From assembly GCF_963506605.1 (NCBI RefSeq), contig NC_083290.1, positions 30,132,001 through 30,196,000 of the forward strand: a stretch of DNA of 64,000 bases, given 5' to 3'. This document shows, piece by piece, positions 15,658 to 30,888 of the stretch. Numbering within the stretch: the stretch's first letter is position 1; every line of letters starts with the position of its first letter. The notes under the pieces were generated by a model. The model was not told where the DNA came from. It did not search any database and worked only from the letters and a program-made list of their open reading frames with translations. The position numbers were made by a program, and so were the translations under genes. The stretch is from Zootoca vivipara. Taxonomy: Eukaryota.

Positions 15658-16165
15658 ATGGGACGCAGCCAGCATCTCTTGTGTGCAACCTTCCTCTTTG
15701 GATTGCTCTTCTCCAAAGGTAGGACCTCGCTCAAAGGCCCTTGAGTCTAGCCTCAGGAAAGGATCTCACATTTGTGGAGGTGGGGGAACAAAGACAGAAA
15801 AGTAGAGAAGTCGGGTCCTTGAGTGGGAAGACAACTAACCCATTCACCTTAAAATGTTCATTGACAAATCCTTTCCCATATTGTTTTATTTTGCCTGTAA
15901 TTGTGCTCTAAAACGCTTCCAAAAACCTGTATATATCAAATGCTTGAAAAGAAGATGCTCGCCACAGTTAGCTTCTATGTCCCACCCTGAAAGGCATCAG
16001 GCCTTACTGGCCGCTGGACCCTATGAAATGTTAGTGCCTTGTTCAGAGGATAAAGCAGAACCACCAACCACAGGAGATAGGTTCCATTTGGCCATCAGGA
16101 TCAATCGCCAACCTACATTAATAATAGCTATCATCACCACATCTTGTGCCAGAGAATTCCACAAG

Positions 16166-16232
<67 letters not shown>

Positions 16233-19200
16233 GAATGTCCCACTCTTCCACTTCATTGTACAACTCTGGGTTGTTGTAGTAGTAGTGTGTGTGAGTGTCT
16301 GTGTGTGTTTGTATAAGAGAGAGAGAGGAGCAGAAGCAGACTTTCCTTTGTCCAATGTGCATAATATAAACCTCAAACATGTCCCTTTTCCCCACCACCA
16401 TTTTTTTTAAAACTAAGACACCACAAACACATTAGCTTTTCCTTGTGACAGCGGGTGTTCTGGCCTCTTAATCGTTTTGGCTGCCCCCGCTGGTTTTTTT
16501 TGTTTTTTTTTAAGCTCTTTGGTGTCCTTATCGAGATGTGGCAGCCAGTAGTTCCAATGCAGCCACACTGTGATTTACATAATGCTGGGTCCATCTGATT
16601 GTCAGTCCCTTTCCTAGCTATCCCTAGTGTGGTATTTGTCCTTTTCATTCTGCCACTACTGCTGAACACCAAGTAATTGCTTCCATTGTTTTGAGGTGTA
16701 CAGCCTGGTGGGAGGATGCAGGTGTTTGTGTTTGGGCTGCAGACATTGTCCTGACTTCTGTGTCCAGATCTGGGCATAGTCCCCACTCCTTGACACCAAT
16801 AAGCCCCTTCCCACAAAGCATTTAAAAGGCCATGTTTCTGTTTCAGAAGTGGGCGAAGTAGCGTGATGTGGCTGACTCTTGGCACAACTTAATTCCCACC
16901 CTCTTTTATTGGACCATGGAATGACTTGGCTTTCTTCATAGCTCAGTTGGTTAGAGCATGGTGCTGATAACGCCGAGGTTGCAGGTTCAATCCCCATATG
17001 GGACAGCTGTATATTCCTTTATTGCAGGAGGGGGTCAGCCTAGTAGCTTCCTCCTCTTCCAGCACAAGCAATGTAGTCTATGTTTTTTATCACTTTCCTG
17101 TGAGAGGGTCTTTACCTTAGGGTTGTGGTCTTCCTTTGTGCATCCCAGCTGTGGCTGATCTTGCGTCCCTCTGAGTGTTAGATGAACCAAGGGCACTGCT
17201 GCGGGTGTTTCACTCCACCTTGTCATTCCTTCCTCATAGGTATTGCTGCGGCATCCATCACAGTGAAGCAGCATAAGAATAACATTGTCCTCTACTGTAA
17301 AGAGGATAACAACCACCCAATAAGCTGGAAGAAAGATGGGAATGCATTAAACCACGGAAACACTAGCCTGTCTTTGGGTGCCATCCTGGATGACCCGAGA
17401 GGTGTCTTTGAGTGCAATGACGCACGTCTTCAGGTGTTCGTCCGAAGTGCGTGAGCCCTTCCTCCCCCATGTGAAGGGAAAAGAAAGCAGTGCTACTCCA
17501 GAGAGTCACACAACTGAGGAGATGGTGGGAGGGGGACACACCCAGATGTGTGGCCACTTGGTGGGGACCACAACAACCCTGTCCAGTGTGAATGTGCTTA
17601 GCCTGGCAGTTGTGATGTTGTCAATGGCCCTGGTGGAGCCTGCTTTCTTTGTATCCTTTTTTTTAAAATACAGTATATAAATTTTATTTTTTGGTTTTTC
17701 AATTTTTTTGCAAACATACAAATTGCAAAAACACAAATTACATACATTTCTAATGCACACATATTTGACTTCCTCCCTTTTGTGGTTTCCTTCTGATTTT
17801 AATTTTTATGCTCCATTTTCCACATTACTCCATCTAAAGTTATTCTTTAGTTTCTCATAATAATATGTTTAACCACTTGTTTTACATTAATCCTGTTAAT
17901 GATCTATTTGCATACATGGGTTTTTCACATTTTTCACAAATTTCTCCCAATCTTTAAGAAATTTTTAGTACACCCATTAACCTTGCCATTTCGGCATAAT
18001 TCATTAATTTAATTAGCCACTTTTCCAGGGTTGGTACTATATCTTCTTTCCATCTCTAGGCAAAAAACATTCTAGCTGCAGTTGTGGCATACATAAACAA
18101 TTTGGGTGGGGTGTCTTTTGGTATATCACTATCTACTATCCCTAAAAAAAGCTTCTGGTTTTTAATGTTAAAAGTTATCTTAAACATTTTCTTCAATTTG
18201 TTATAAATCATTTCCCATAAAGCTTTTACTCTCTTACAAGATCACCGCATATGGTAGAGAGTACTATCTTTTTCTGGGGCTTGTTTCCTAATTAATTGGT
18301 TAAACTAAATGAACAATCTTACTTCAAAAGCAGACTGCTGTTGCATGAAAGATCTCAGACACCATCAAAGATTGGCAGCTTCTGCATGGGAGCTGTCAAA
18401 TACTCACATCAGATCTGACTGTGATTTCATTTTTTAAAGAAGTTGAAATCAAATATCAAATATCAAATATCGTTGGATATCACACAATGGCATCAAACTT
18501 AGAATACCTTTCAGATGAGAATTTTGAATGACAAAATTTGTTTCTGTTCCACTTTTAAGCCTCTCGGCTGGCTTGTTCTTTTGTTAGTGGTAAGTATCCT
18601 GCTAAGCATATTGCGCAGGTCTCTCTGCTGGTTGTGGTGCAGCAACAGTCCCTGGGCTCCGGGACTTGTTTTGTTGGATTGATGGGCTGTTTGGATGTTA
18701 GGAGTTGTGTTGGTCGATGATCTCCGGCGGGCTAGGGACAAAGGTAAGAGCTGTTTCCTTGTTCTGCTGGATCTCTCAGCGGCTTTTGACACCATCGACC
18801 ATAACATCCTTCTGGACCGTCTAGAGGGCTTGGGAGCTGGGGGCACTGTCATGCAGTGGTTCCGCTCCTTCCTCCTGGGCCGTGTTCAGAAAGTGGTGGT
18901 GGGGGATGAGTGTTCAGACCCCTGGGCTCTCACTTGTGGGGTGCCTCAGGGTTCTGTCCTCTCCCCCATGCTTTTTAACATCTATATGCAGCCGCTGGGA
19001 GAGATCATCAGGGGGTTTGGGCTGGGTGTCCATCAGTATGCTGATGATACCCAGCTCTACCTCTCTTTTAAATCAGAACCAGTGAAGGCGGTGAAGGTCC
19101 TGTGTGAGTGCTTGGAGGCGGTTGGAGGATGGATGGCGGCTAACAGATTGAGATTGAATCCTGACAAGACAGAAGTACTGTTTGTGGGGGACAGGAGGCG

Positions 19201-19973
19201 GGTGGGTGTGGAGGACTCTCTGGTCCTGAATGGGGTAACTGTGCCCCTGAAAGACCAGGTGTGCAGCCTGGGAGTCATTTTAGACTCACAGCTGTCCATG
19301 GAGGCACAGGTCAACTCTGTGTCCAGGGCAGCTGTTTATCAGCTCCATCTGGTACGCAGGCTGAGTCCCTACCTGCCCACTGACTGTCTCTCCAGAGTGG
19401 TGCATGCTCTAGTTATCTCTCGCTTGGACTACTGCAATGCGCTCTACGTGGGGCTACCTTTGAAGGTGACCCGGAAACTACAACTAATGCAGAATGCGGC
19501 AGCTAGACTGGTGACTGGGAGCGGCCGCCGAGATCACATAACACCGGTCCTAAAAGACCTACATTGGCTCCCAGTACGTTTCCGAGCACAATTCAAAGTG
19601 TTGGTGTTGACCTTTAAAGCCCTAAACGGCCTCGGTCCGGTATACCTGAAGGAGCGTCTCCACCCCCATCGTTCTGCCCGGACACTGAGGTCCAGCTCCG
19701 AGGGCCTTCTGGCGGTTCCCTCATTACGAGAAGCCAAGTTACAGGGAACCAGGCAGAGGGCCTTCTCGGTAGTGGCACCCACCCTGTGGAATGCCCTCCC
19801 ACTAGAGGTCAAAGAGAACAATTACCAGACCTTTAGAAGGCATCTCAAGGCAGCCCTGTTTAGGGAAGCTTTTAATGTTTGATGGATTTCTGTATTTTAG
19901 AATTTCTGTTTTTTTGGAAGCCACCCAGAGTGGCTGGGGGAACCCGGCCAGATGGGCGGGGTATAAATAATAA

Positions 19974-20023
<50 letters not shown>

Positions 20024-23000
20024 CTAGAAAACCCACCCTACAACCAGAAGTGCTTTTCATCTAGTCCCAGATGGCAAATGGCTGTTTCCAGTGCTTTTTT
20101 TTTAATGTTTAGGGTTACTAATGTTTTTAATGTTTAGGGTTACTCTCATTTTGACTCAAGAAAACCACCATTTTATAGTTCAAATCAGGAGAAATAAATA
20201 CAGTAAATGGACAAAAGTACAAAGATTCATAAAATGTTTAGGGGCATGCATCCGCCTGCATCCCCCCCCGAAGAAAAAAAGCACTGGCTGTTTCTAGTCA
20301 CTCAATGGCGAGGGACCGGCCATTTATTGATTATTCTTGTCATTTAATAAATTTCTATCCTGCCCGTCCCCCCAAAGGAGCCCAGGGTTGCAAACATCAA
20401 AATACTAAAGCACTACAGTTCCCATGTGCTCAGAGGCACACTCTATTCAAATCAAGCCACATGTGGACAAAACTCAGGTGTGCTTGTGAGCATAGGATGC
20501 ATGTTGAGTTCTCTTCCTCTTGCCACAGTGTGCCAGAATTGTATTCGTCTGGACCTTGCCGCCATCATGGGGATTCTGACGGCCAGCATCGTGGCTACGC
20601 TTTTCATGGCTGTTGGTGTGTACTACATTGCTGCAGGGGAGCCGGGCCGACGATCTCAGGGTGAGCATTGGGGGACAGACAATTGCTGGGAGATGGGGAA
20701 ACATCATTGGAAAAGGGAGCAATGTCCAAGTTGGTATCCACATTCCCATACCTGGTATGTTTAATGTTTAATTTTGTTAATCCCCCACTTGGAGTCATCC
20801 TGACATTTCCTGTTTTGACTTTGCAGCTTCTGACAAGCAGACCTTATTAGCCAATGAGCAGCTCTACCAGGTGAGTGGGTGCCTGTGGTCAATCTCTTCC
20901 TCTCCTCCATGGTGGTGTTTTCCTGGACAGCTCCTCCCAAGCTGTGAAATGAGGGGCCCTTTGCATCCAAGAATTCCTTGACTTCTGCAAAGCTTCTTCT
21001 GCCTCAGCCTAGGGTGCTGCTTTGCAGAGACAATATACTGTCATACCTCGGTTTAAGTACACCTCGGTTTGAGTACTTTCAGTTTAAGTACTCCGCGGAC
21101 CTGTCTGGAACGGATTAATCCACTTTCCATTACTTTCAATGGGAAAGTTCACTTCAGGTTAAGTACGCTTCAGGTTGAGTACGGACTTCCAGAACCAATT
21201 ACACTCATACTTCGGGTTAAGTACGCTTCAGGTTGGGTACTCTGTGGACCCGTCTGGAACTGGATTAATCAACTTTCCATTACTTTCAATGGGAAAGTTC
21301 ACTTCAGGTTAAGTACGCTTCAGGTTAAGTACAGACTTCCAGAACCAATTGTGTACTTAAACCGAGGTACCACTGTATTCTTCTGGGAATCATGATTCTG
21401 TCTGTGTGTTCTTTTAAAAAGCTAGTTTCTAGCCCTCGTGGCCAGAGATTAGCCTCCCAGTGGGGTAAAATGAAGAGACTGTGGTGGCAGAAAATCCCAA
21501 AAGCAACTTCATTTGAAAAAATAAAAATAAAGGAAGAATAAATGAAGGATGAGAACACCCACAGTCCTTTCCGGACACCTGAAGTTTGCTGTGATATGGG
21601 GTGTGTAGCAGGAAGCAGGGCGAGTCCTCCATCCCTTGAAACAGGAGCAGCAGCTGTTTCCAAATCCAGTATGAGGTGTGTTGGTGCTTCCAGCCCTTTC
21701 CTCTCTGGCTTGGAGTCAAAGGCCATTCTTAAGCCTCCATTCTTAAGTGGAAGAAGCACTCAGCCTATACCTCTCCTTCTACAGGAAACAGAGCAGCTTT
21801 CTTTTCTTCCCTAGATAGCAGCCTCCTTGGACACAAATACATAGGCTGAATCCAAGAGGTCTAGGCACACAATCTCTCCCATGAGTAAGCAATGCTAGAT
21901 TTAGGGTGGTGGCACTGAGCCAAGGGGGCGCATGATATTGTTGTTGTTGTTGTCGTCGTTGTTGTTAATCCCTATGTTTATATTGGTACTAAGAAGATTC
22001 ACAAAAAATCAGCTGCACCAAAATGAATTGTTGAGAAAATAAGATTTTTTGTGTGTGTGTGTGTGTGCCAAATTTTGTCCTTGCTTAGGGCGCCCCTATT
22101 ACCAAAGTCTGCCCCTGGAGTGAGCAGTTGCAAACACACATCAAACTCCAGTGGCACAATTTTAAGAGAGTTTACAGTATTATGAATGAGGCTTCCGAAA
22201 ATAAGCATTTGAGGGGGAAAGGAATGTTGGCAGTGTTCTGTTTTTAAGAGCTCTTGATTCAGGTGGGTTCTGATTGACAGGTGGCTCTGGCATGCTGATA
22301 GGAATAGAAGCATGGAGCCAGGGTGGGTGCCACCTTTTGGAAGTGGGGAGAGTGGGCTTTCACGAATTCATCACTGCAGGAGTTGCCCAACTTCCCTCTG
22401 CTTGTGCATTGGAGGGGAGACTAGGGTGGGGTAGGGTGGGGTGCAAGCTCCCCACTTAAACATGATAGAGAATCAGAGCAGCTGTGGTACTCTAATGGGG
22501 CTGAACTAAATTTCCCACCATCCCTGTCTGCTAGCCAGACTTGCTGGGGCTGATGGGAGTTGTAGTTCAGCAAAGGCTGGGGAGGGGGGGGAGAGTCCCA
22601 GCTCCTGGTCTAGAAAAACTGGGTACTCTTAAAGGGACAGGCTAGGTCAGAACCAGGTTAGACCAGCATTGAGACATTTCAAGTGGTCAGGGGACTACAG
22701 GGTGAGCAGCCCTTGCAACAACTCTTTCATACAGAGCCTGCTGTAAGGTCCGTGCATGTTTGTCACTACTCTGGGAGTTCATTGGGATAGCTGCTGGATT
22801 TCCTGGTCTTTTTTAAAAAAAACAAGGAGTAGACAGACAGAGAAAGTGAATCTAAGGTTGCAAAAGCTTCTGCTGTAGTAAACTTGTTAAATCTTTTAAC
22901 GTGCCATGAAAAGGCAGGCAATAGTACTAAGAAAGAAGTGACTGTGCTGCTGGTTCAACAGAAACTGTCAGATTTTCTTTTTGTGAGATGGAAGAAATAT

Positions 23001-23454
23001 TGGGAAAACTCTGATCTGTCACGGGCAGGTCATGACACCACCCGACCTCTTGCCATAAAAAAATGAATAAACAAAGGGCAGGGACTCCAGGCTGGGCAGC
23101 TGAAATGGATCCAGCCTTTGCAGGTTTTGCTGCAGCAGACTAACCCAGCTTCCCCCCTGGAAATCCCTGCAGCCTCCAGATAGCTAATGGGAACCCTCAT
23201 CTCCAGTGGCATCAGGATGGGTCAAGTGCAGCTGGGGGGGGGGCTTTCAATGCAGACGCAGTCCGCTAGCACTCCCATGTGCCAGACTAGTCTTGCCCAA
23301 ATCCTCCTCGGTCAACCTGCAAGTCCCTAAGGCAGGTTAAGAAAAGTACAGACCCCTGTTCTAACGGCAGGCCTCTCTTCCCCTCCAGCCTCTCGGAGAA
23401 CGCAACAATGGGCAGTACAGCCACATCGGAGTGGCCAAGACCCGCCACCAGTGA
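15658..23454 (+). CDS. CD3D: T-cell surface glycoprotein CD3 gamma/delta chain (single non-mammalian CD3G/D orthologue), ~169 aa
   Basis: Exons 15658-15718 (signal peptide MGRSQHLLCATFLFGLLFSK), 17240-17446 (Ig: C...W.KDG...DDPRGVFEC...LQVFVR), 20529-20660 (CQNC motif + TM), 20827-20870 (SDKQTLLANEQLYQ), 23389-23454 (PLGERNNGQYSHI..., ITAM). PolyA AATAAA 23813-23818. Orientation and five-exon layout are CD3D-like; the SDKQTLL motif is CD3G-like. Confidence 0.93.
16169..16230. repeat. (CT)n microsatellite in CD3G/D intron 1
   Basis: Direct observation. Confidence 0.97.
16420..16680 (-). mobile_element. Degenerate CR1-like LINE fragment
   Basis: Minus-strand similarity to the CR1 ORF2 3' region (from recall), heavily decayed. 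Confidence 0.5.
16939..17036 (+). mobile_element. tRNA-Ile-derived SINE head (not a functional tRNA)
   Basis: TAGCTCAGTTGGTTAGAGCATGGTGCTGATAACGCCGAGGTTGCAGGTTCAATCCCC carries A and B boxes, but the acceptor stem is absent and the sequence runs into a SINE body. Confidence 0.7.
17655..18275 (-). mobile_element. L1-clade LINE 3' fragment
   Basis: Poly(T) and TTTATT at the left end. Decayed minus-strand ORF2 C-terminus resembling the other L1 fragments in the window. Confidence 0.65.
18705..20022 (+). mobile_element. 5'-truncated L2-clade LINE with uninterrupted RT/C-terminal ORF and (TTA)n tail, in CD3G/D intron 2
   Basis: ORF 18695-19882 has LLDLSAAFDTIDH, GVPQGSVLSP, YADD, SRLDYCNALY and LHWLP motifs. 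Tail (TTA)n at 19974-20022. Confidence 0.92.
21036..21377. mobile_element. Tc1/mariner-type MITE with an internal ~150-bp duplication
   Basis: TA-flanked TIRs ...TACCTCGGTTTAAGTACAC / GTGTACTTAAACCGAGGTACCACTGTA. Internal units ~21084-21200 and ~21235-21350. Confidence 0.85.
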
Positions 23455-23908
23455 GAAGGGGACAAAGTGTTCTTCCTCTGATTTGGCAGCAAAGAGTGAA
23501 TTGCTGATGGCTCCTCCTTTTGCCATGGGGAGCTCAAAAGGGAAGGTTCCTTCAAGCTATAGTTAAGGGTGTAGAAATAGTTTGACTCTTGCTGTGCTTT
23601 CATTTCAAAATCTAACCCCTGTCCTTACCATTGAGCTGGCCTCCCTTTGTTCTTCCTACCCCCCTCCCCACCCCAACTTTCCCCTCTGATTTGAAGGGGC
23701 TCCAATAACTAAGAAAGCCAAAAGGGCTTTTGTTGTTTCTGCAGTGATCCACTTTCAACATTGCCTGTTCGCTGTGAGCTGTTTTATAGCAAGCAATGCA
23801 TAAATAGAATGAAATAAATAATAATCAAGGAAATGCTTCTCCAGTTTCCAGTGAAACTGCATCTCATCCGTGTGCAGCGCATACCTTTCCAAATTACTAA
23901 TTTTACTG

Positions 23909-25935: not shown

Positions 25936-28900
25936 TCAGAAGGCCCTGGGCTCCAGCCCAGCATACACCTCCCGCTGGCCTTTCCGGATGGGCTATTGGA
26001 ATAAAGAGGAGAGGTTACTCACCAAGGGTCCTTCTGTGATGGGGCCATTTCTGTCTCCCCCTGGAGAGGCCATGGGGGTCACCAACAAGCAGGGCCTGAT
26101 TACCTCAGGTGAGCAAGCAGCTGCCCACAGAGGGCTGCGGGGCCTTCCTGCCAGGTGTGCCCAGTCTAGCCCTTGGCCCTCCCAGTGCTGATGGCGTTCA
26201 GGCGACAGGTTATTTGGCTGCCCTCCATAGACTCTCCCTCCTGGCCCCTGGCAGCCACCCTCTGCTGTGCTTACCTCATAGTCTGGGTTTGGGACTGGTG
26301 GGGGGCGGTCCACCTTTTGGCCTGGAAGACAATGCAAAGTGGGTATTTGTTAGCACAACCAAGAATTGGAGGTGGTTATTGCAGGATGGTTAACTGTGGG
26401 GCATCAGCCCCTGTCTGCGCATACAAGGAACTCCTGGGTGCTTTAGCTGAAATACTTTGTGTCAGAACGATGGGGCTGTAAAGTCCCCCCCAGCCCAGCC
26501 CAGAGCCACTGCTGCTGCTATGACTTCTGGGCTGGGCCAATCAGGATCCCTGCTGGGGTCTAGCCAGCCAGCCAGCCAGCCACCCAGCTGGTTTCTCCTC
26601 CAGTTCACCCCTTAAAGCAAGCCCTGAACCAGCTGATCCCATCCCAGCAACACCCAGAGGAGCCTTCAGGTCCCCCAAATTCTTAAGCTGTGGGCGTACC
26701 AGAGCCCACCCTTGCCACCAGATCTGCAACCCTCCCCACCTCCAGCTCTGGATGGGAGCCATATATGCTTGGCATTTATTTACCAATCCAACCCCAGCAT
26801 AGACAACTTCCCATTTTCTCTGTGGGACAACGGAGGAAGCCGAAGGCACCCCTGTGGAGAGCCCTGTGGAGAGTACGAGAGTTACTCACCTCGTGTCCGT
26901 CCCCGTGTGCCTCCCCCTGCGGCCCCCCCACCAAAGCTGGTGGCAGGTTTCTTGCTGCGGCAGTAGTAGACCAGGAACATGATCCCCAGGGTAATGAGCA
27001 GGTCAGCAACGATGATGCCGGCCACCAGCCCGATGCTCAGGTCCACGCAGTCATCACAGGCTGCCCAGGAGAGCAAGAGAGTCAAGCCATAGAAACTGGG
27101 GCAGCCCTACTATTAGGCAGCTTGGGGCAAGGAAGGGGTTGGTGCACAGAGCCAGTGGCATAGCATAGGTTGCTGGCGCCTGAGGCGGGTAAAATGTTGC
27201 ATCCCCTGGTGGATTGGGCAGCCCAGAGTCCAGCACAGGAGCAGAGAGGGAATGCTGCTGCAGCCTCTCCTCCTCTCTGCCTAGGAGTAGAGTGGCTCCA
27301 ATCCTGAAGGCCCAGCCCAGGTGCAGCTTCCTTCTCTGTGGCTCTGGCCTCAATGAGGGAGCCTGTTGTGGAAGCGCCTGGTTGCACCCCTTTAAAAAAT
27401 GTATCCGGGGAGACGGCCCCCCACAACCTCACCCATGCTACACTCTGCACAGAACCTACCCTCCAGCCTCTGGATGATGGGTAGGCAAACTAAGGCCCGG
27501 GGGCCAGATCCGGCCCAATTGCCTTCTAAATCCGGCCCTCAGATGGTCTGGGAATCAGCATGTTTTTACATGAGTAAAATGTGTCCTTTTATTTAAAATG
27601 CATCTTTGGGTTATTTGTGGGGCATAGGAATTCGTTCATTCCCCCCACCCCCAAAAAATATAGTCTGCCCCCCCCCAACAAGGTCTGAGGGACAGTGGAG
27701 CGGCCCCCTGCTGAAAAAGTTTGCTGAGCCCTGCTCTGGATGCTCCTACACATACAAGGGGGTGGGTGGGACTTGTCTTGTCCTTCCCTGCAGGCAGCAA
27801 AATGTACTGGGATGTCCAGGCACACTCTGGCTTTGGAGAAAGATCTCACTGGGGTGCGGGGGCTGTCTCCTCCAGTTTTATCCAAGTCTGCTAGGGCCGA
27901 GCAGGCTTTGTTTGCAAGGTCAGGGAATGGATACCCCAGACTTGGCTTCTGGCACAGGAGGAGGAGAAGCTCTTTGCAGTTCCCTTGGATCCCTCCACCT
28001 TCCACATCAGAGGAGCCCTGCAGCTGGGTCAAGCCAAAGGTGGCCCAGCTAGTCCAGTGTCACAGCAGCCAATGAGATGCCCCAAAACAAGGCCCGCAAG
28101 CAGGACAAGAGTGGGACGGCACTCTTCTCCCCCCCCCCTTTCAATTCCACCAACTGGTATTATTCAGAGGCATACTGGGGGGGGGGGTAGAGCATAGTCA
28201 TCCCTCACAGTAGCTCTCGCCTGAAGAAAGCAGAGGATTTCTAGTACCAGAACCTCAAACTTGAGCACTGACCTTTGATTTGCAGATAAATCTTGTTGGA
28301 TGTCTTGCCATCCTGACAGGTGAAGTCACCCTTGACCACTTCGTTGTCATTCATGGCTTCAATGGTCAAGGTTTCATTTTCTCTGGTGACATGATGATTT
28401 CCATTCATTTTATCGTCCTCGTCCCATTTGGCATTTTGTAGAGGGCAGGTGACAGTTACGCGGCGCCCAGAGATGTCCACTTTGTGCGATTCAGAGGATG
28501 AGGCTGGAGAACAGAAGAAAAGACAGGTGACCACAAGGCTAGGGTGAAAAGGTCTCCACTCTGCCTTTTCCTTGGTGCCTCTGGCTGAGAAAGAGCTCTG
28601 ACTTCATTTACCAGCCCCTCAGAAAAGCCTCATCCAAGGCCTTTAGAAACCTTTGGTTCTCTCTCTTTCAGNNNNNNNNNNNNNNNNNNNNNNNNNNNNN
28701 NNNNNNNNNNNNNNNNNNNNNNNNNNNNNNNNNNNNNNNNNNNNNNNNNNNNNNNNNNNNNNNNNNNNNNNNNNNNNNNNNNNNNNNNNNNNNNNNNNNN
28801 NNNNNNNNNNNNNTGGGAGAGCAGAGGTGAGGGAAAAGTAACATCAGCTTCTCCCATCTGTGACAGTTCTCTCTCTACCAGGGCACTTAAGAGGTGCCAA

Positions 28901-30888
28901 GACTCATGCTTTTAACTCAGAGGAGTTTTTATTTGAACCCGACCACAGTTGTTTTAGTCAGGAACATCGGTTAGGATGTTTTCTTTCATATAGCTTTGAA
29001 TCAGAACATTTAGCAGCAGAAATTATGTTGAAGCTGAGGCATATAAATTATGGAAACGCCCCCCCCCCCCCGTTAGCATTTTGTTGTTGTTTAGTCGTGT
29101 CTGACTCTTCATGACCCCATGGACCACAGCACGCCATGCACTCCTGTCTTCCACTGCCTCCCGCAGTTTGGCTAAACACATTTTAGTAGCTTCGAGAACA
29201 CTGTCCAACCATCTCGTCCTCTGTCGTCCCCTTCTCCTTGTGCCCTCAATCTTTCCCAACATCAGGGTCTTTTCCGGGGAGTCTTCTCTTCTCATGAGGT
29301 GGCCAAAGTATTGGAGCCTCAGCTTCAGGATCTGTCCTTCCAGTGAGCACCCAGGGCTGATTTCCTTAAGAATTGATAGGTTTGATCTTCTTGCAGTCCA
29401 TGGGACTCTCAAGAGTCTCCTCCAGCACCAGAATTCAAAAGCATCAATTCTTCGGCGATCAGCCTTCTTTATGGTCCAGCTCTCACTTCCATGCATCACT
29501 ACTGGGAAAACCATAGCTTTAACTATACGGACATTTGTCGGCAAGTTGATGTCTCTGCTTTTTAAGATGCTGTCTAGGTTTGTCATTGCTTTTAGCATAC
29601 CTTCCAACATTTCTCCAATGAAAAAAGGGACATATATTCTATTATTGTTATTATCTCTACCCTGCTCATTTGACTGGGTTGCCCCAGCCACTCTGGGCAG
29701 CTTCCAACATATATCAAACACAATAAAACATTAAACATTTTTTTAAAAACCTTCCCTATACAGGGCTGCCTTCACATGTCTTCTAAGGGTTGTATAGTTA
29801 TGTATCTCCTTGGCTTGGTGGTCGCATAACTCTATACCCTCTAACATTTCTCCAGTGAAAATAGGGGCGTCCTAAGGGGAAAGCAGGACATTCCGGGATC
29901 AAATCAGAAAGCGGAATGGCTTCTGTAAATCTGGGACTGTCCCTGGAAAATAGGGACAAGTACTTGGGGGGGGGGGCGCGCGCGTCTGAGTTAGGTACAG
30001 TATGTGGGTGGGGGACTAGCCCTAATCTGCAGCAGGGCCAAGGTGGGGGGCAAGCTACGCAAGAGAAATGTGGAAGTTAAGATCTCCAGGATTAGTGTCT
30101 GCAAGGAAGCTGCGAGGAATCCAGCTCTGCGCTGCTACTGCTGGGTTGGTTTTCAAAGGATTGAGGGCCTCACCTGCCCAGGGATAGCCTGATCCATGTA
30201 AACATGCTCTTGAGCTTGATGGGGGTGGGGACATTTCCCAGTTCACCCAGTGCCTGTGTCCTTTTCCTGGTGCAATTTAAGCCCCAGTGCCCCAAACCAC
30301 CTATGGCTAGAAACACTTTGAAGCTGCTTGCAGGCAGCTCTGGCACCGTCTAGGAGGGCCCCTCCCTGGTGCCCCAATCATCTCTCCCTCAACAGAACTG
30401 GCTGAAGCATAGAACTGTAGAGCAGGATGGGCCCCCTATGGTCATGTAGTTCAGCCCTCTGCAACGTAGGAATCCTGCCCACAGCCATTCTTGTTCAATG
30501 TTCTGGTTGATAGCCAGATGTACTGATCCACTGCACCACAGCAATGGTCTGGGAGTTTCCTGCGGTGTCAGGAGAGCCTGTTTCAGCATCATCAGCGAGG
30601 GGCAAACTCGTGGACTGGCTGCTCTGATGTAACCCAAATGGGCTCCCATGATGGCAGAGGAGGGCATTGCCTTCGTGCCCAGTTTGTGGGTTTCCAAGTT
30701 CCTCTTGGTGGCCACCGCTAGGAACTGAGGCCTAGATGGACCTTGGAGGGCCCTTTTGACCCAGCAAGGTGATGTGTGTCCTTCTGATGTCCTCCCACCC
30801 AATCCAGCCCTCACACCACAACAAGCCAGGTGTACTTACACAAAGGGAGGACAAGAACAAAGGCTCCGAGACAGACTCCCAGGTGCAT
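25936..30888 (-). CDS. CD3E: T-cell surface glycoprotein CD3 epsilon chain
   Basis: Exons (minus): 30840-30888 (49-nt leader MHLGVCLGAFVLVLPL), 28273-28503 (Ig domain), 26890-27060 (CDDC + TM GIIVADLLITLG), 26275-26321 (RPPPVPNPDYE), 25936-25992 (PIRKGQREVYAGLEPRAF*). PolyA signal on minus strand at 25049-25054. Mini-exon(s) between leader and Ig are unresolved because of the N gap. Confidence 0.96.
27476..27733. mobile_element. hAT-type non-autonomous element in a CD3E intron
   Basis: Imperfect TIRs (GGGTAGGCAAACT...AGTTTGCTGAGCCCTG) and 8-bp TSD CTCTGGAT. Confidence 0.75.
28672..28813. other. Assembly gap (142 N) inside CD3E
   Basis: Run of N. Confidence 1.
29080..29591 (-). mobile_element. 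BovB (RTE) LINE 3' fragment, TSD TTAGCAT
   Basis: Minus ORF ESWTIKKADRRRIDAFEFWCWRRLLRVPWTARRSN...GRQRTRWLD, (CAA)n tail, TSD at 29073-29079 and 29592-29598. Confidence 0.93.

What the first reader, a model, noticed from the sequence alone, without database searches (positions are those of the whole stretch)
20529..20660. The sole CD3 gamma/delta chain lacks the transmembrane acidic residue (Asp/Glu to Ser): possible non-canonical TCR-CD3 assembly
Seen: the TM exon reads CQNCIRLDLAAIMGILTA-S-IVATLFMAVGVYYIA with AGC (Ser) at 20585-20587, and there is no D/E within the hydrophobic helix. CD3E in the same window keeps its Asp (GIIVA-D-LLITL). Established: CD3 delta (GIIVT-D-VIATL) and CD3 gamma (Glu at the same position) each pair an acidic TM residue with that of CD3 epsilon around a TCR lysine to build the complex. 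Squamates have lost the TRG/TRD loci. GAC to AGC needs two base changes, so a simple base-call error is unlikely. The gene otherwise looks intact (CxxC, SDKQTLL, ITAM, splice sites). Inference: both epsilon-containing dimers would carry one acid plus a Ser hydroxyl, implying a rewired intramembrane TCR assembly code in this lineage, possibly with compensatory changes in TCR alpha/beta TM segments.
Basis: partly seen in the sequence, partly recalled or inferred. Interest (0 to 1): 0.85.

Follow-up and report, generated by a model that had tools for sequence, protein, structure and literature searches.

The report
Lizard CD3 gamma/delta lacks membrane acid
In the common lizard, and in every non-gecko lizard and snake sampled, the single CD3 gamma/delta chain of the T-cell receptor has a strictly conserved serine where all other sampled vertebrates keep a membrane-buried acidic residue that reviews call indispensable for receptor assembly.

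Summary
Codon AGC at 20585-20587 (Ser) lies in the transmembrane exon (20529-20660, + strand) of an intact five-exon CD3 gamma/delta gene. It aligns without gaps to Asp111 of human CD3 delta and Glu122 of CD3 gamma.

It is not an assembly error:
- An independent DNA contig is identical.
- A 958-nt spliced RNA contig carries the codon.
- A related lacertid keeps AGC despite six other amino-acid changes in the exon.

The window is Zootoca vivipara. The serine is not species-specific:
- 17 of 17 non-gecko squamates have Ser (skinks, lacertids, an amphisbaenian, iguanians, anguimorphs, snakes).
- Four geckos keep Asp or Glu. Tuatara, turtles and birds keep Asp.
- In the Ser clade only 8 of 42 columns around the helix are invariant, and Ser is one. 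It is therefore selected, not merely tolerated.

CD3 epsilon keeps its Asp. Because geckos keep the acid, the link to gamma-delta TCR loss is loose.

The likely mechanism is inferred, not shown: a Lys-Asp(epsilon)-Ser(gamma/delta) triad replaces Lys-Asp-Asp/Glu. I found no paper describing this. A 2026 review calls both acids absolutely required and conserved in all vertebrates with T cells.

The parts
15658..15718 (+). CD3 gamma/delta leader exon, coding part (ATG at 15658; donor GT at 15719-20)
   Evidence: P0055 residues 1-21 match at 100%; sequence read
17240..17447 (+). CD3 gamma/delta Ig-domain exon
   Evidence: tblastn of P0055; splice sites read; Pfam Ig_4 (PF16680), E 3.9e-16, on P0055
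20529..20660 (+). CD3 gamma/delta exon for the CxxC stalk, transmembrane helix and start of the cytoplasmic tail
   Evidence: independent DNA contig and spliced RNA contig, each with 0 differences
20585..20587 (+). AGC, the Ser that replaces the conserved transmembrane Asp/Glu (residue 109 of P0055)
   Evidence: gap-free alignment to CD3 delta D111 and CD3 gamma E122 of 6JXR; unchanged in X2, X14, X21 and in related species X16
20827..20870 (+). exon 4: SDKQTLL di-leucine motif and first half of the ITAM (LYQ)
   Evidence: joined to the TM exon and exon 5 in the X14 RNA contig
23389..23454 (+). exon 5: second half of the ITAM (PLGERNNGQYSHI) and stop codon TGA
   Evidence: Pfam ITAM (PF02189) on P0055
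26890..27060 (-). CD3 epsilon exon for the CxxC stalk and transmembrane helix
   Evidence: protein P0136 (Zootoca CD3 epsilon) found with the window's Ig ORF
27002..27004 (-). GAC, the retained transmembrane Asp of CD3 epsilon (D-L-L-I-T motif)
   Evidence: Asp and Thr at +4 kept in all 24 squamate CD3 epsilon sequences inspected
28274..28504 (-). CD3 epsilon Ig-domain exon (approximate limits from tblastn)

Best explanation
The window holds the CD3 gamma/delta - CD3 epsilon locus of the common lizard Zootoca vivipara.

Shown: the single CD3 gamma/delta gene is intact, spliced and transcribed. It encodes Ser at the transmembrane position that is Asp or Glu in every other sampled vertebrate. 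This is a fixed, old substitution. It is shared by all sampled non-gecko squamates (Unidentata) and absent from geckos, tuatara, turtles and birds, so it most likely arose once on the stem of Unidentata. The Ser has stayed invariant while most of the helix changed around it, so the hydroxyl is functionally needed.

Inferred mechanism: these animals still build a TCR alpha-beta - (CD3 gamma/delta-epsilon)x2 - zeta-zeta complex. At each of the two TCR lysine sites, the usual Lys plus two carboxylates is replaced by Lys plus the CD3 epsilon Asp plus the CD3 gamma/delta Ser, with the Thr one turn below kept (SxxxT instead of DxxxT). That gives a charge-neutral salt bridge capped by a hydrogen-bonding hydroxyl.

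In mammalian DAP12 a one-Asp-one-Ser dimer assembles very poorly. The lizard complex therefore probably leans on other contacts. Candidates seen here are changes fixed in the same clade in CD3 epsilon: the juxtamembrane Asp becomes Ser or Gly, and a Trp/Leu becomes Gly, which creates a Gxxx[G/S/A] small-residue motif in the outer half of the helix.
For: Real and expressed:
- Sequence and PDB alignment.
- Independent DNA contig with 0 differences.
- Spliced 958-nt RNA contig with 0 differences in the TM exon.
- AGC kept in a second lacertid despite 10 base and 6 amino-acid changes in the exon.

Species: P0055 and P0136 are the RefSeq Zootoca vivipara CD3 gamma-like and epsilon proteins. P0055 matches all five CD3 gamma/delta exons and P0136 the four CD3E exons listed at 100%.

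Distribution (taxonomy):
- Ser in Zootoca, Podarcis, Rhineura, two Anolis, Sceloporus, Pogona, Phrynocephalus, Elgaria, Varanus, Candoia, Erythrolamprus, Crotalus, Pseudonaja and Lerista.
- Ser also in two unnamed sequences: P0018 groups with the skink Lerista in the gene tree; P0010 has a near-identical helix to Lerista.
- Asp in Gekko kuhli and in one unnamed gecko-clade sequence.
- Glu in Eublepharis and Sphaerodactylus.
- Asp in tuatara and in all turtles and birds listed.
- Over 131 sequences the counts are 102 D, 21 S, 7 E, 1 N.

Selection: in 17 Ser-clade sequences only 8 of 42 columns are invariant (C, Q, C, G, A, S, F, V), while neighbouring columns show up to 6 different residues. 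Thr at +4 is kept in 16 of 17.

Single gene:
- tblastn of six CD3 gamma/delta proteins finds no second copy in the window.
- The protein search returned one gene per squamate species.
- In geckos and in Zootoca the gene and CD3E lie on contigs of identical length, presumably the same scaffold.

Partners:
- CD3 epsilon Asp and DxxxT are kept in all squamates.
- Skink TRAC keeps Arg and Lys, and TRBC and TREC keep Lys.

Clade-specific CD3 epsilon changes: W/L to G in 18 of 18 aligned sequences, and juxtamembrane D to S/G in 19 of 19 sequences inspected.
Against: - No assembly or structural data exist for any squamate TCR-CD3 complex, so the Lys-Asp-Ser triad is inference.
- In vitro, DAP12 dimers with one Asp changed to Ser bound KIR only 'to very low levels' (PMC1440944). 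A 2026 review states both acids are absolutely required (PMC13107469). A hydroxyl alone is therefore a poor substitute in the mammalian context.
- The TCR alpha and beta transmembrane segments of Zootoca itself were not seen. Only a skink's were, from a paper.
- The gene tree is too short to resolve the deep nodes. The single origin therefore rests on the accepted species tree.
- The CD3 epsilon changes share one branch with the Ser. That is one event and cannot show co-evolution.
- Dibamids and several families (teiids, cordylids, xantusiids, chameleons, blind snakes) were not sampled.
Confidence: 0.72

Rival explanations
1. Neutral relaxation. In squamates, CD3 gamma/delta-epsilon docking onto the TCR is carried by the ectodomains, the connecting peptides and the CD3 epsilon Asp. 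The gamma/delta acid became dispensable, perhaps after the gamma-delta TCR was lost, and drifted to Ser. The Ser has no role of its own.
For: The transmembrane helix of squamate CD3 gamma/delta is far more variable than that of birds and turtles. Between two lacertids the TM exon differs at 10 of 132 bases, at least 6 of them amino-acid-changing. The adjacent intron differs at 9 of 166 bases. Loss of TRG/TRD came before the change.
Against: A freed position should vary. It is Ser in 17 of 17 sequences from five major clades, while neighbouring columns show up to 6 residues. Geckos also lack gamma-delta TCR genes according to the literature, yet still keep an acid.
Confidence: 0.1
2. Adaptive tuning rather than a like-for-like replacement. 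Removing one buried carboxylate may change the fate of the free chain in the ER, since buried charges mark unassembled subunits for retention and degradation. Or it may loosen the membrane coupling between TCR and CD3, resetting receptor level or signalling threshold. It overlaps with the best explanation and does not exclude it.
For: Ser is strictly conserved. Reviews link the transmembrane charges to quality control as well as to assembly (PMC13107469). Several other fixed changes near the membrane in CD3 epsilon fall on the same branch.
Against: No data on stability, surface level or signalling exist for any squamate. Nothing in the sequence separates this reading from the simple triad model.
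Confidence: 0.13
3. This copy is not the working gene. Either it is a decaying or non-functional gene, or another paralogue with the acid does the work elsewhere in the genome.
For: Only 64 kb of the genome was inspected directly. The RNA evidence is low depth: one contig at word depth 7 and a few raw reads.
Against: - The reading frame, all splice sites, the two Ig cysteines, CxxC, SDKQTLL and the ITAM are intact.
- The RNA is correctly spliced.
- The same Ser-bearing gene is the only CD3 gamma/delta hit in more than ten annotated squamate proteomes. Bird and turtle homologues at 45-50% identity were found easily in the same search.
- The position next to CD3E is the conserved one.
Confidence: 0.03
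4. Sequencing or assembly error, or a rare allele of the sequenced individual.
For: None found.
Against: Runs from three studies hold all sampled words of the stretch. A contig from another sample and study is identical. The RNA contig agrees. A related species and 16 other squamate sequences encode Ser.
Confidence: 0.01

Closest known systems
Non-mammalian CD3 gamma/delta (tuatara P0030; turtle and bird proteins; gecko P0050, P0065)
   Same: Orthologous single gene next to CD3E. Same five-exon layout, Ig_4 domain, CxxC stalk, conserved Gly and Ala before the polar site, Thr at +4, SDKQTLL and ITAM.
   Different: Those proteins have Asp (Glu in two geckos) at the polar site. The Zootoca protein and all other sampled non-gecko squamate proteins have Ser.
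Human CD3 delta and CD3 gamma in the TCR-CD3 cryo-EM structure 6JXR
   Same: The exon aligns over 42 residues without gaps in the helix, so the helix register is the same. The role as partner of CD3 epsilon at the TCR alpha and TCR beta lysines is expected by homology.
   Different: Asp111 and Glu122 are replaced by Ser. One gene does the work of the two mammalian paralogues, so both lysine sites are affected.
DAP12 Asp/Ser heterodimer mutants (Feng, Call, Wucherpfennig 2006, PMC1440944)
   Same: A signalling dimer that offers one Asp and one Ser to a receptor lysine. This is the arrangement predicted for CD3 epsilon with squamate CD3 gamma/delta.
   Different: That was an engineered mutant of a homodimer, and it assembled with KIR only 'to very low levels'. 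Here the arrangement is natural, fixed and conserved, so it must work in its own context.
DxxxT / DxxxS motif of CD3, DAP12 and DAP10 (Chem Rev 2026, PMC13107469)
   Same: A small hydroxyl residue one turn below the polar site is retained: S-I-V-A-T in Zootoca.
   Different: The leading residue of the motif is itself a hydroxyl residue, not a carboxylate. The review describes the acids as conserved among all vertebrates with T cells.

Membership tests
CD3 gamma/delta gene family (orthologue of the single non-mammalian CD3 gamma/delta) | CD3-type Ig domain | tested here: met
   Pfam Ig_4 (PF16680), 59.8 bits against a cut-off of 30.1, on P0055, which is identical to the window's exons
CD3 gamma/delta gene family (orthologue of the single non-mammalian CD3 gamma/delta) | CxxC stalk followed by a single transmembrane helix homologous to CD3 delta/gamma | tested here: met
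   CQNC at 20531-42; the exon aligns to CD3 delta 93-134 and CD3 gamma 104-143 of 6JXR, E about 2e-07
CD3 gamma/delta gene family (orthologue of the single non-mammalian CD3 gamma/delta) | Cytoplasmic di-leucine motif and one ITAM | tested here: met
   SDKQTLL at 20829-49; YQPL...YSHI across exons 4 and 5; Pfam ITAM, 27.8 bits against a cut-off of 22.2
CD3 gamma/delta gene family (orthologue of the single non-mammalian CD3 gamma/delta) | Position next to CD3E | tested here: met
   CD3E lies tail to tail. Its last coding exon (25939-25992) is about 2.5 kb from the CD3 gamma/delta stop codon, and its TM exon is at 26890-27060
CD3 gamma/delta gene family (orthologue of the single non-mammalian CD3 gamma/delta) | Transcribed and correctly spliced | tested here: met
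   958-nt contig of run X14 joins the TM exon, exon 4 and exon 5; raw RNA reads in X21. Tissue not known.
Canonical tripartite transmembrane assembly motif (one TCR Lys with two carboxylates of a CD3 dimer, KDD/KDE) | Acidic residue in CD3 epsilon | tested here: met
   GAC at 27004-27002; Asp kept in all 24 squamate CD3 epsilon sequences inspected
Canonical tripartite transmembrane assembly motif (one TCR Lys with two carboxylates of a CD3 dimer, KDD/KDE) | Acidic residue in the CD3 gamma/delta partner | tested here: not met
   Ser (AGC 20585-87), with no other Asp or Glu inside the helix. It is therefore a variant of the motif, not a member.
Canonical tripartite transmembrane assembly motif (one TCR Lys with two carboxylates of a CD3 dimer, KDD/KDE) | Basic residues in the TCR alpha and TCR beta helices | tested here: inconclusive
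   Not in the window. The published alignment for the skink Tiliqua rugosa shows Arg and Lys in TRAC and Lys in TRBC and TREC. The Zootoca chains were not seen.
Canonical tripartite transmembrane assembly motif (one TCR Lys with two carboxylates of a CD3 dimer, KDD/KDE) | Physical assembly of the three helices | not testable with these tools
   Needs co-translation and immunoprecipitation, surface reconstitution, or a structure

The most novel reading that the evidence does not exclude
The 'one base, two acids' rule of TCR-CD3 membrane assembly is not universal. If the sampling holds, roughly four fifths of squamate species (my estimate from species counts) have used a Lys-Asp-Ser triad at both CD3 sites since the stem of Unidentata. 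It would be made workable by changes fixed on the same branch in CD3 epsilon: loss of the juxtamembrane Asp and a new Gxxx[G/S/A] packing motif. The complex would then be held by a neutral salt bridge plus tighter helix packing, a second natural solution to assembling an eight-helix immune receptor.
Probability: 0.45. Interest if true: 0.85.

Novelty: new variant of a known kind. Interest (0 to 1): 0.75.

Why it matters
The pairing of each TCR lysine with two carboxylates of a CD3 dimer is treated as an invariant of T-cell receptors. A 2026 review calls both acids absolutely required and conserved in all vertebrates with T cells.

A natural, long-fixed exception in most lizards and all sampled snakes matters for three reasons:
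- It shows the rule has a working alternative.
- It supplies a ready comparative system. Gecko or tuatara chains carry the acid and other squamate chains carry Ser. This allows a test of what the second carboxylate really contributes, including its protonation state, which is still unclear.
- It points to candidate compensating residues in CD3 epsilon.

It also bears on squamate immunology, where the gamma-delta TCR is lost and a new TCR epsilon chain has appeared. It could inform the design of transmembrane modules for engineered receptors.

Tried and rejected
The TM exon was searched alone by reference. The public protein P0055, returned by a search and 100% identical to all five exons, stood in for the joined model.
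I could therefore fetch no DNA of other squamates, make no codon-level reconstruction of the Asp-to-Ser path, run no dN/dS test, and make no direct synteny check in geckos.
3. The best hit of the whole-library search, P0001 (1719 aa, 19 matched stretches, 38% identity), is a repetitive hydrophobic protein. I set it aside as a composition match.
4. The gene tree of 25 CD3 gamma/delta proteins did not resolve the deep squamate nodes (9 of 22 inner branches open). It only shows that geckos form one clade (100/100) and that the fewest state changes is 3.
5. The Glu of C-I-E-L-D looked at first like a change co-varying with Ser. It is also lost in geckos and present in Elgaria and Varanus, so I dropped it.
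6. Five literature searches found no description of the squamate Ser. Morrissey et al. 2022 (J Immunol) is not held. Subscription journals are not covered, so prior description cannot be excluded.
7. The TCR alpha and beta chains of Zootoca could not be reached.
9. The N run at 28672-28813 was left untouched.
Full report
**1. What is in the sequence**

The stretch 20529-20660 on the + strand is an exon. It is bounded by an acceptor AG (20527-28) and a donor GT (20661-62). Read from 20531 it encodes the CxxC stalk (CQNC), the juxtamembrane IRLD, a hydrophobic helix ...GILTA-S-IVATLF..., and the start of the tail (AAGEPGRRSQ).

A phmmer search of this 43-residue exon against all PDB chains returns only CD3 delta and CD3 gamma above noise. 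The best matches are human CD3 delta 93-134 (E 1.9e-07) and CD3 gamma 104-143 (E 2.3e-07) of entry 6JXR. The alignment has no gap in the helix, so the Ser falls on Asp111 and Glu122. There is no other Asp or Glu inside the helix.

**2. The gene is whole**

The exons are:
- leader exon, ATG at 15658, coding to 15718
- Ig exon 17240-17447
- TM exon 20529-20660
- exon 4, 20827-20870 (SDKQTLL and the first ITAM tyrosine)
- exon 5, 23389-23454 (PLGERNNGQYSHI, stop TGA)

A search instead returned a public protein, P0055, named 'T-cell surface glycoprotein CD3 gamma chain-like [Zootoca vivipara]'. It matches all five exons at 100%. It carries Pfam Ig_4 and ITAM above their cut-offs.

CD3E lies tail to tail on the minus strand (leader near 30841-30888, Ig 28274-28504, TM exon 26890-27060, then 26275-26322 and 25939-25992). 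It keeps Asp (GAC 27004-27002) in GIIVA-D-LLIT. Its protein is P0136, Zootoca vivipara CD3 epsilon. The window is therefore the CD3 locus of the common lizard. tblastn with six CD3 gamma/delta proteins finds no second copy in the 64 kb.

**3. It is not an artefact, and it is expressed**

- Runs from three studies hold all sampled 31-mers of 20300-20900.
- Run X2 (another sample and study) gives a 626-nt contig covering 20300-20891 with no difference. It includes intron, so it is genomic DNA.
- Run X14 gives a 958-nt contig. It covers 20529-20659 and 23385-23600, and the 41 letters between fit exon 4. The contig therefore joins the TM exon, exon 4 and exon 5 at the predicted junctions. It runs on for 330 nt on the 5' side, which is the size of the Ig exon plus leader. 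It has no difference in the TM exon.
- Raw RNA reads of X21 cover the TM exon thinly (mean depth 3.4). All have the first mate on the minus strand, as expected for a + strand RNA in most stranded libraries. None has a variant at the codon.
- I set likeness to 80% so that a close paralogue would have shown as minority letters. None appeared. Coverage was low, so this is weak evidence.

**4. A relative keeps the Ser while the exon changes around it**

Run X16 comes from a different species. Its contig is about 94% identical over 20374-21035. In the TM exon it differs at 10 of 132 bases, giving six amino-acid changes (L to V, I to V, T to L, L to F, M to L, Y to C). None of the differences is in 20585-87. 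The adjacent intron differs at 9 of 166 bases. The exon as a whole is therefore not evolving slowly, yet the Ser codon is untouched. The numbers are small.

**5. Distribution**

A full-library phmmer search with the exon and a word-indexed search with a full-length hit gave 131 sequences in which the helix could be read. The counts were 102 Asp, 21 Ser, 7 Glu and 1 Asn. Source names and NCBI taxonomy sort them cleanly.

| Residue | Taxa |
|---|---|
| Ser | Lacertidae (Zootoca, Podarcis), Amphisbaenia (Rhineura), Iguania (Anolis carolinensis, A. sagrei, Sceloporus, Pogona, Phrynocephalus), Anguimorpha (Elgaria, Varanus), Serpentes (Candoia, Erythrolamprus, Crotalus, Pseudonaja), Scincidae (Lerista), plus unnamed P0018 (groups with Lerista) and P0010 (helix near-identical to Lerista) |
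| Asp | Gekko kuhli, one unnamed sequence in the gecko clade, tuatara, all turtles and birds listed |
| Glu | Eublepharis, Sphaerodactylus (geckos); mammalian CD3 gamma-type sequences |

In NCBI's classification every Ser-bearing species is in Unidentata, and the acid-bearing squamates are in Gekkota.

The gene tree is too short to resolve the deep nodes. It does show geckos as one clade (100/100), and the fewest changes of state is three. On the accepted species tree this is one Asp-to-Ser change on the stem of Unidentata. From published timetrees, as I recall them and did not test here, that is well over 150 million years ago.

**6. The Ser is under selection**

Among 17 Ser-clade sequences only 8 of the 42 columns from the CxxC to the tail are invariant: C, Q, C, the Gly five residues before the site, the Ala before it, the Ser, one Phe and one Val. 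Neighbouring columns carry up to six different residues. Thr at +4 is kept in 16 of 17. A position that had merely lost its function would be expected to vary like its neighbours.

**7. The partners**

CD3 epsilon keeps its Asp and the Thr at +4 in all 24 squamate sequences inspected.

For the TCR chains I could only use the literature. Sampson et al. 2025 (PMC11754216) state that squamate TCR alpha keeps Arg and Lys and TCR beta keeps Lys. Their Supplementary Figure 4 shows this for the skink Tiliqua rugosa, in TRAC, TRBC and the new TREC. Skinks are in the Ser clade.

I did find fixed differences in CD3 epsilon that separate Unidentata from geckos, tuatara and all others:
- The residue two positions after the juxtamembrane Asp is Gly in 18 of 18 aligned sequences. 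It is Trp in 5 geckos and tuatara, and Leu or others elsewhere.
- With the older Gly four residues on, this makes a Gxxx[G/S/A] motif in 19 of 19 sequences inspected.
- The juxtamembrane Asp itself is Ser or Gly in 19 of 19. One turtle also has Ser there.
- Two adjacent Ig-domain positions of CD3 epsilon (residues 66-67 of P0136) and one of CD3 gamma/delta (Leu57) are also clade-specific.

All of these share a single branch with the Ser. They are candidates for compensation, not evidence of co-evolution.

**8. How it most likely works**

Established background: each TCR lysine is bound by a pair of carboxylates from a CD3 dimer, supported by the Thr of a DxxxT motif. The review PMC13107469 says both acids are absolutely required, that even Asp-to-Asn compromises assembly, and that the polar residues are conserved among all vertebrates with T cells. 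In DAP12, a dimer with one Asp and one Ser bound KIR only 'to very low levels' (PMC1440944).

Shown here: in most squamates both CD3 dimers can offer only one carboxylate (epsilon) plus a conserved Ser and Thr (gamma/delta).

Inferred: the lysine forms a neutral salt bridge with the epsilon Asp. The Ser hydroxyl hydrogen-bonds to the lysine or the carboxylate, taking the place of what may be a protonated second acid in the canonical triad. The energy lost is made up elsewhere, perhaps by tighter packing through the new small-residue motif in CD3 epsilon or by ectodomain contacts. I put this at about 0.6 given that the gene is functional. The factual core (real, old, conserved, sole gene) I put above 0.9.

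**9. [quoted passage not shown]

The literature reports that TRG and TRD were deleted in squamates generally, after the split from tuatara. Geckos keep Asp or Glu. The Ser therefore arose later, on a narrower branch. The loss may have removed a constraint, but it does not by itself explain the change.

**10. Novelty**

The protein sequences are in public databases as automatic predictions. Five full-text searches found no paper that notes the substitution. The most recent review asserts universal conservation. The held library misses most subscription journals, and Morrissey et al. 2022 could not be read, so an earlier mention cannot be excluded. I class this as a new variant of a known kind of system.

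**11. Limits**

- The TCR chains of Zootoca were not seen.
- Several squamate families and Dibamidae were not sampled.
- The tissue of the RNA runs is unknown.
- No structural or biochemical test was possible.
- The N run at 28672-28813 was left as it is.

Noticed in passing
window 27029-27037 (- strand), CD3E TM exon: In CD3 epsilon of all 19 non-gecko squamates inspected, the juxtamembrane Asp of CxxC-x-E-[LMV]-D is Ser or Gly (AGC 27037-27035 here). The residue two positions later is Gly (GGG 27031-27029), against Trp in geckos and tuatara and Leu in birds and turtles. This creates a Gxxx[G/S/A] motif in the outer half of the helix. It is fixed in the same clade as the CD3 gamma/delta Ser.
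   Followed up: partly
P0136 residues 18 and 66-67 (CD3E Ig exon, about 28274-28504, - strand); P0055 residue 57 (Ig exon 17240-17447): Further ectodomain positions whose residues in non-gecko squamates do not overlap those of geckos, tuatara, archosaurs, turtles or mammals. Examples: CD3 epsilon Asn/Asp-Tyr becomes hydrophobic-Glu, and CD3 gamma/delta has an invariant Leu. Whether they lie at an interface was not examined.
   Followed up: no
protein P0016 (Sorex araneus CD3 delta, XP_054989231.1): The only other non-acidic residue at this site among 131 sequences is Asn, in the shrew CD3 delta model. That model is only 136 aa long and ends before the ITAM. It could be a model error or a decaying gene.
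   Followed up: no
window 18683-19879 (+ strand), intron between the Ig and TM exons of CD3 gamma/delta: An open 399-codon frame with a reverse transcriptase domain (Pfam RVT_1, E 2.9e-26) in the same orientation as the gene. It is a retroelement remnant or copy inside the intron.
   Followed up: partly
window 29026-29730 (- strand), CD3E intron: An open 235-codon frame with no Pfam match at E 0.001. It lies beside the N run at 28672-28813, which was left untouched.
   Followed up: partly
window 20966-21409 and 22520-22630: Very high-copy dispersed repeats in the intron after exon 4. Summed contig depth reaches about 1,000,000 in a DNA run, and there are thousands of raw RNA reads at 80-95% likeness. 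Internal 16-bp tandem units occur at 21045-21332. They are probably SINE-like elements.
   Followed up: no
window 20529-20660 compared with run X16: Between two lacertids the TM exon differs at 10 of 132 bases (six amino-acid changes, three silent bases). The adjacent intron differs at 9 of 166 bases. The exon is thus evolving at about the intron's rate while the Ser, the Ala before it and the Thr at +4 stay fixed.
   Followed up: partly
proteins P0050, P0054 (Asp) and P0065, P0084 (Glu): Within geckos the acidic residue switches between Asp (Gekko and an unnamed relative) and Glu (Eublepharis, Sphaerodactylus). This mirrors the Asp/Glu difference between mammalian CD3 delta and gamma.
   Followed up: no
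window 16169-16230 and 19974-20023: Perfect microsatellites: (TC)31 between the leader and Ig exons, and (ATT)16.7 in the intron before the TM exon.
   Followed up: no
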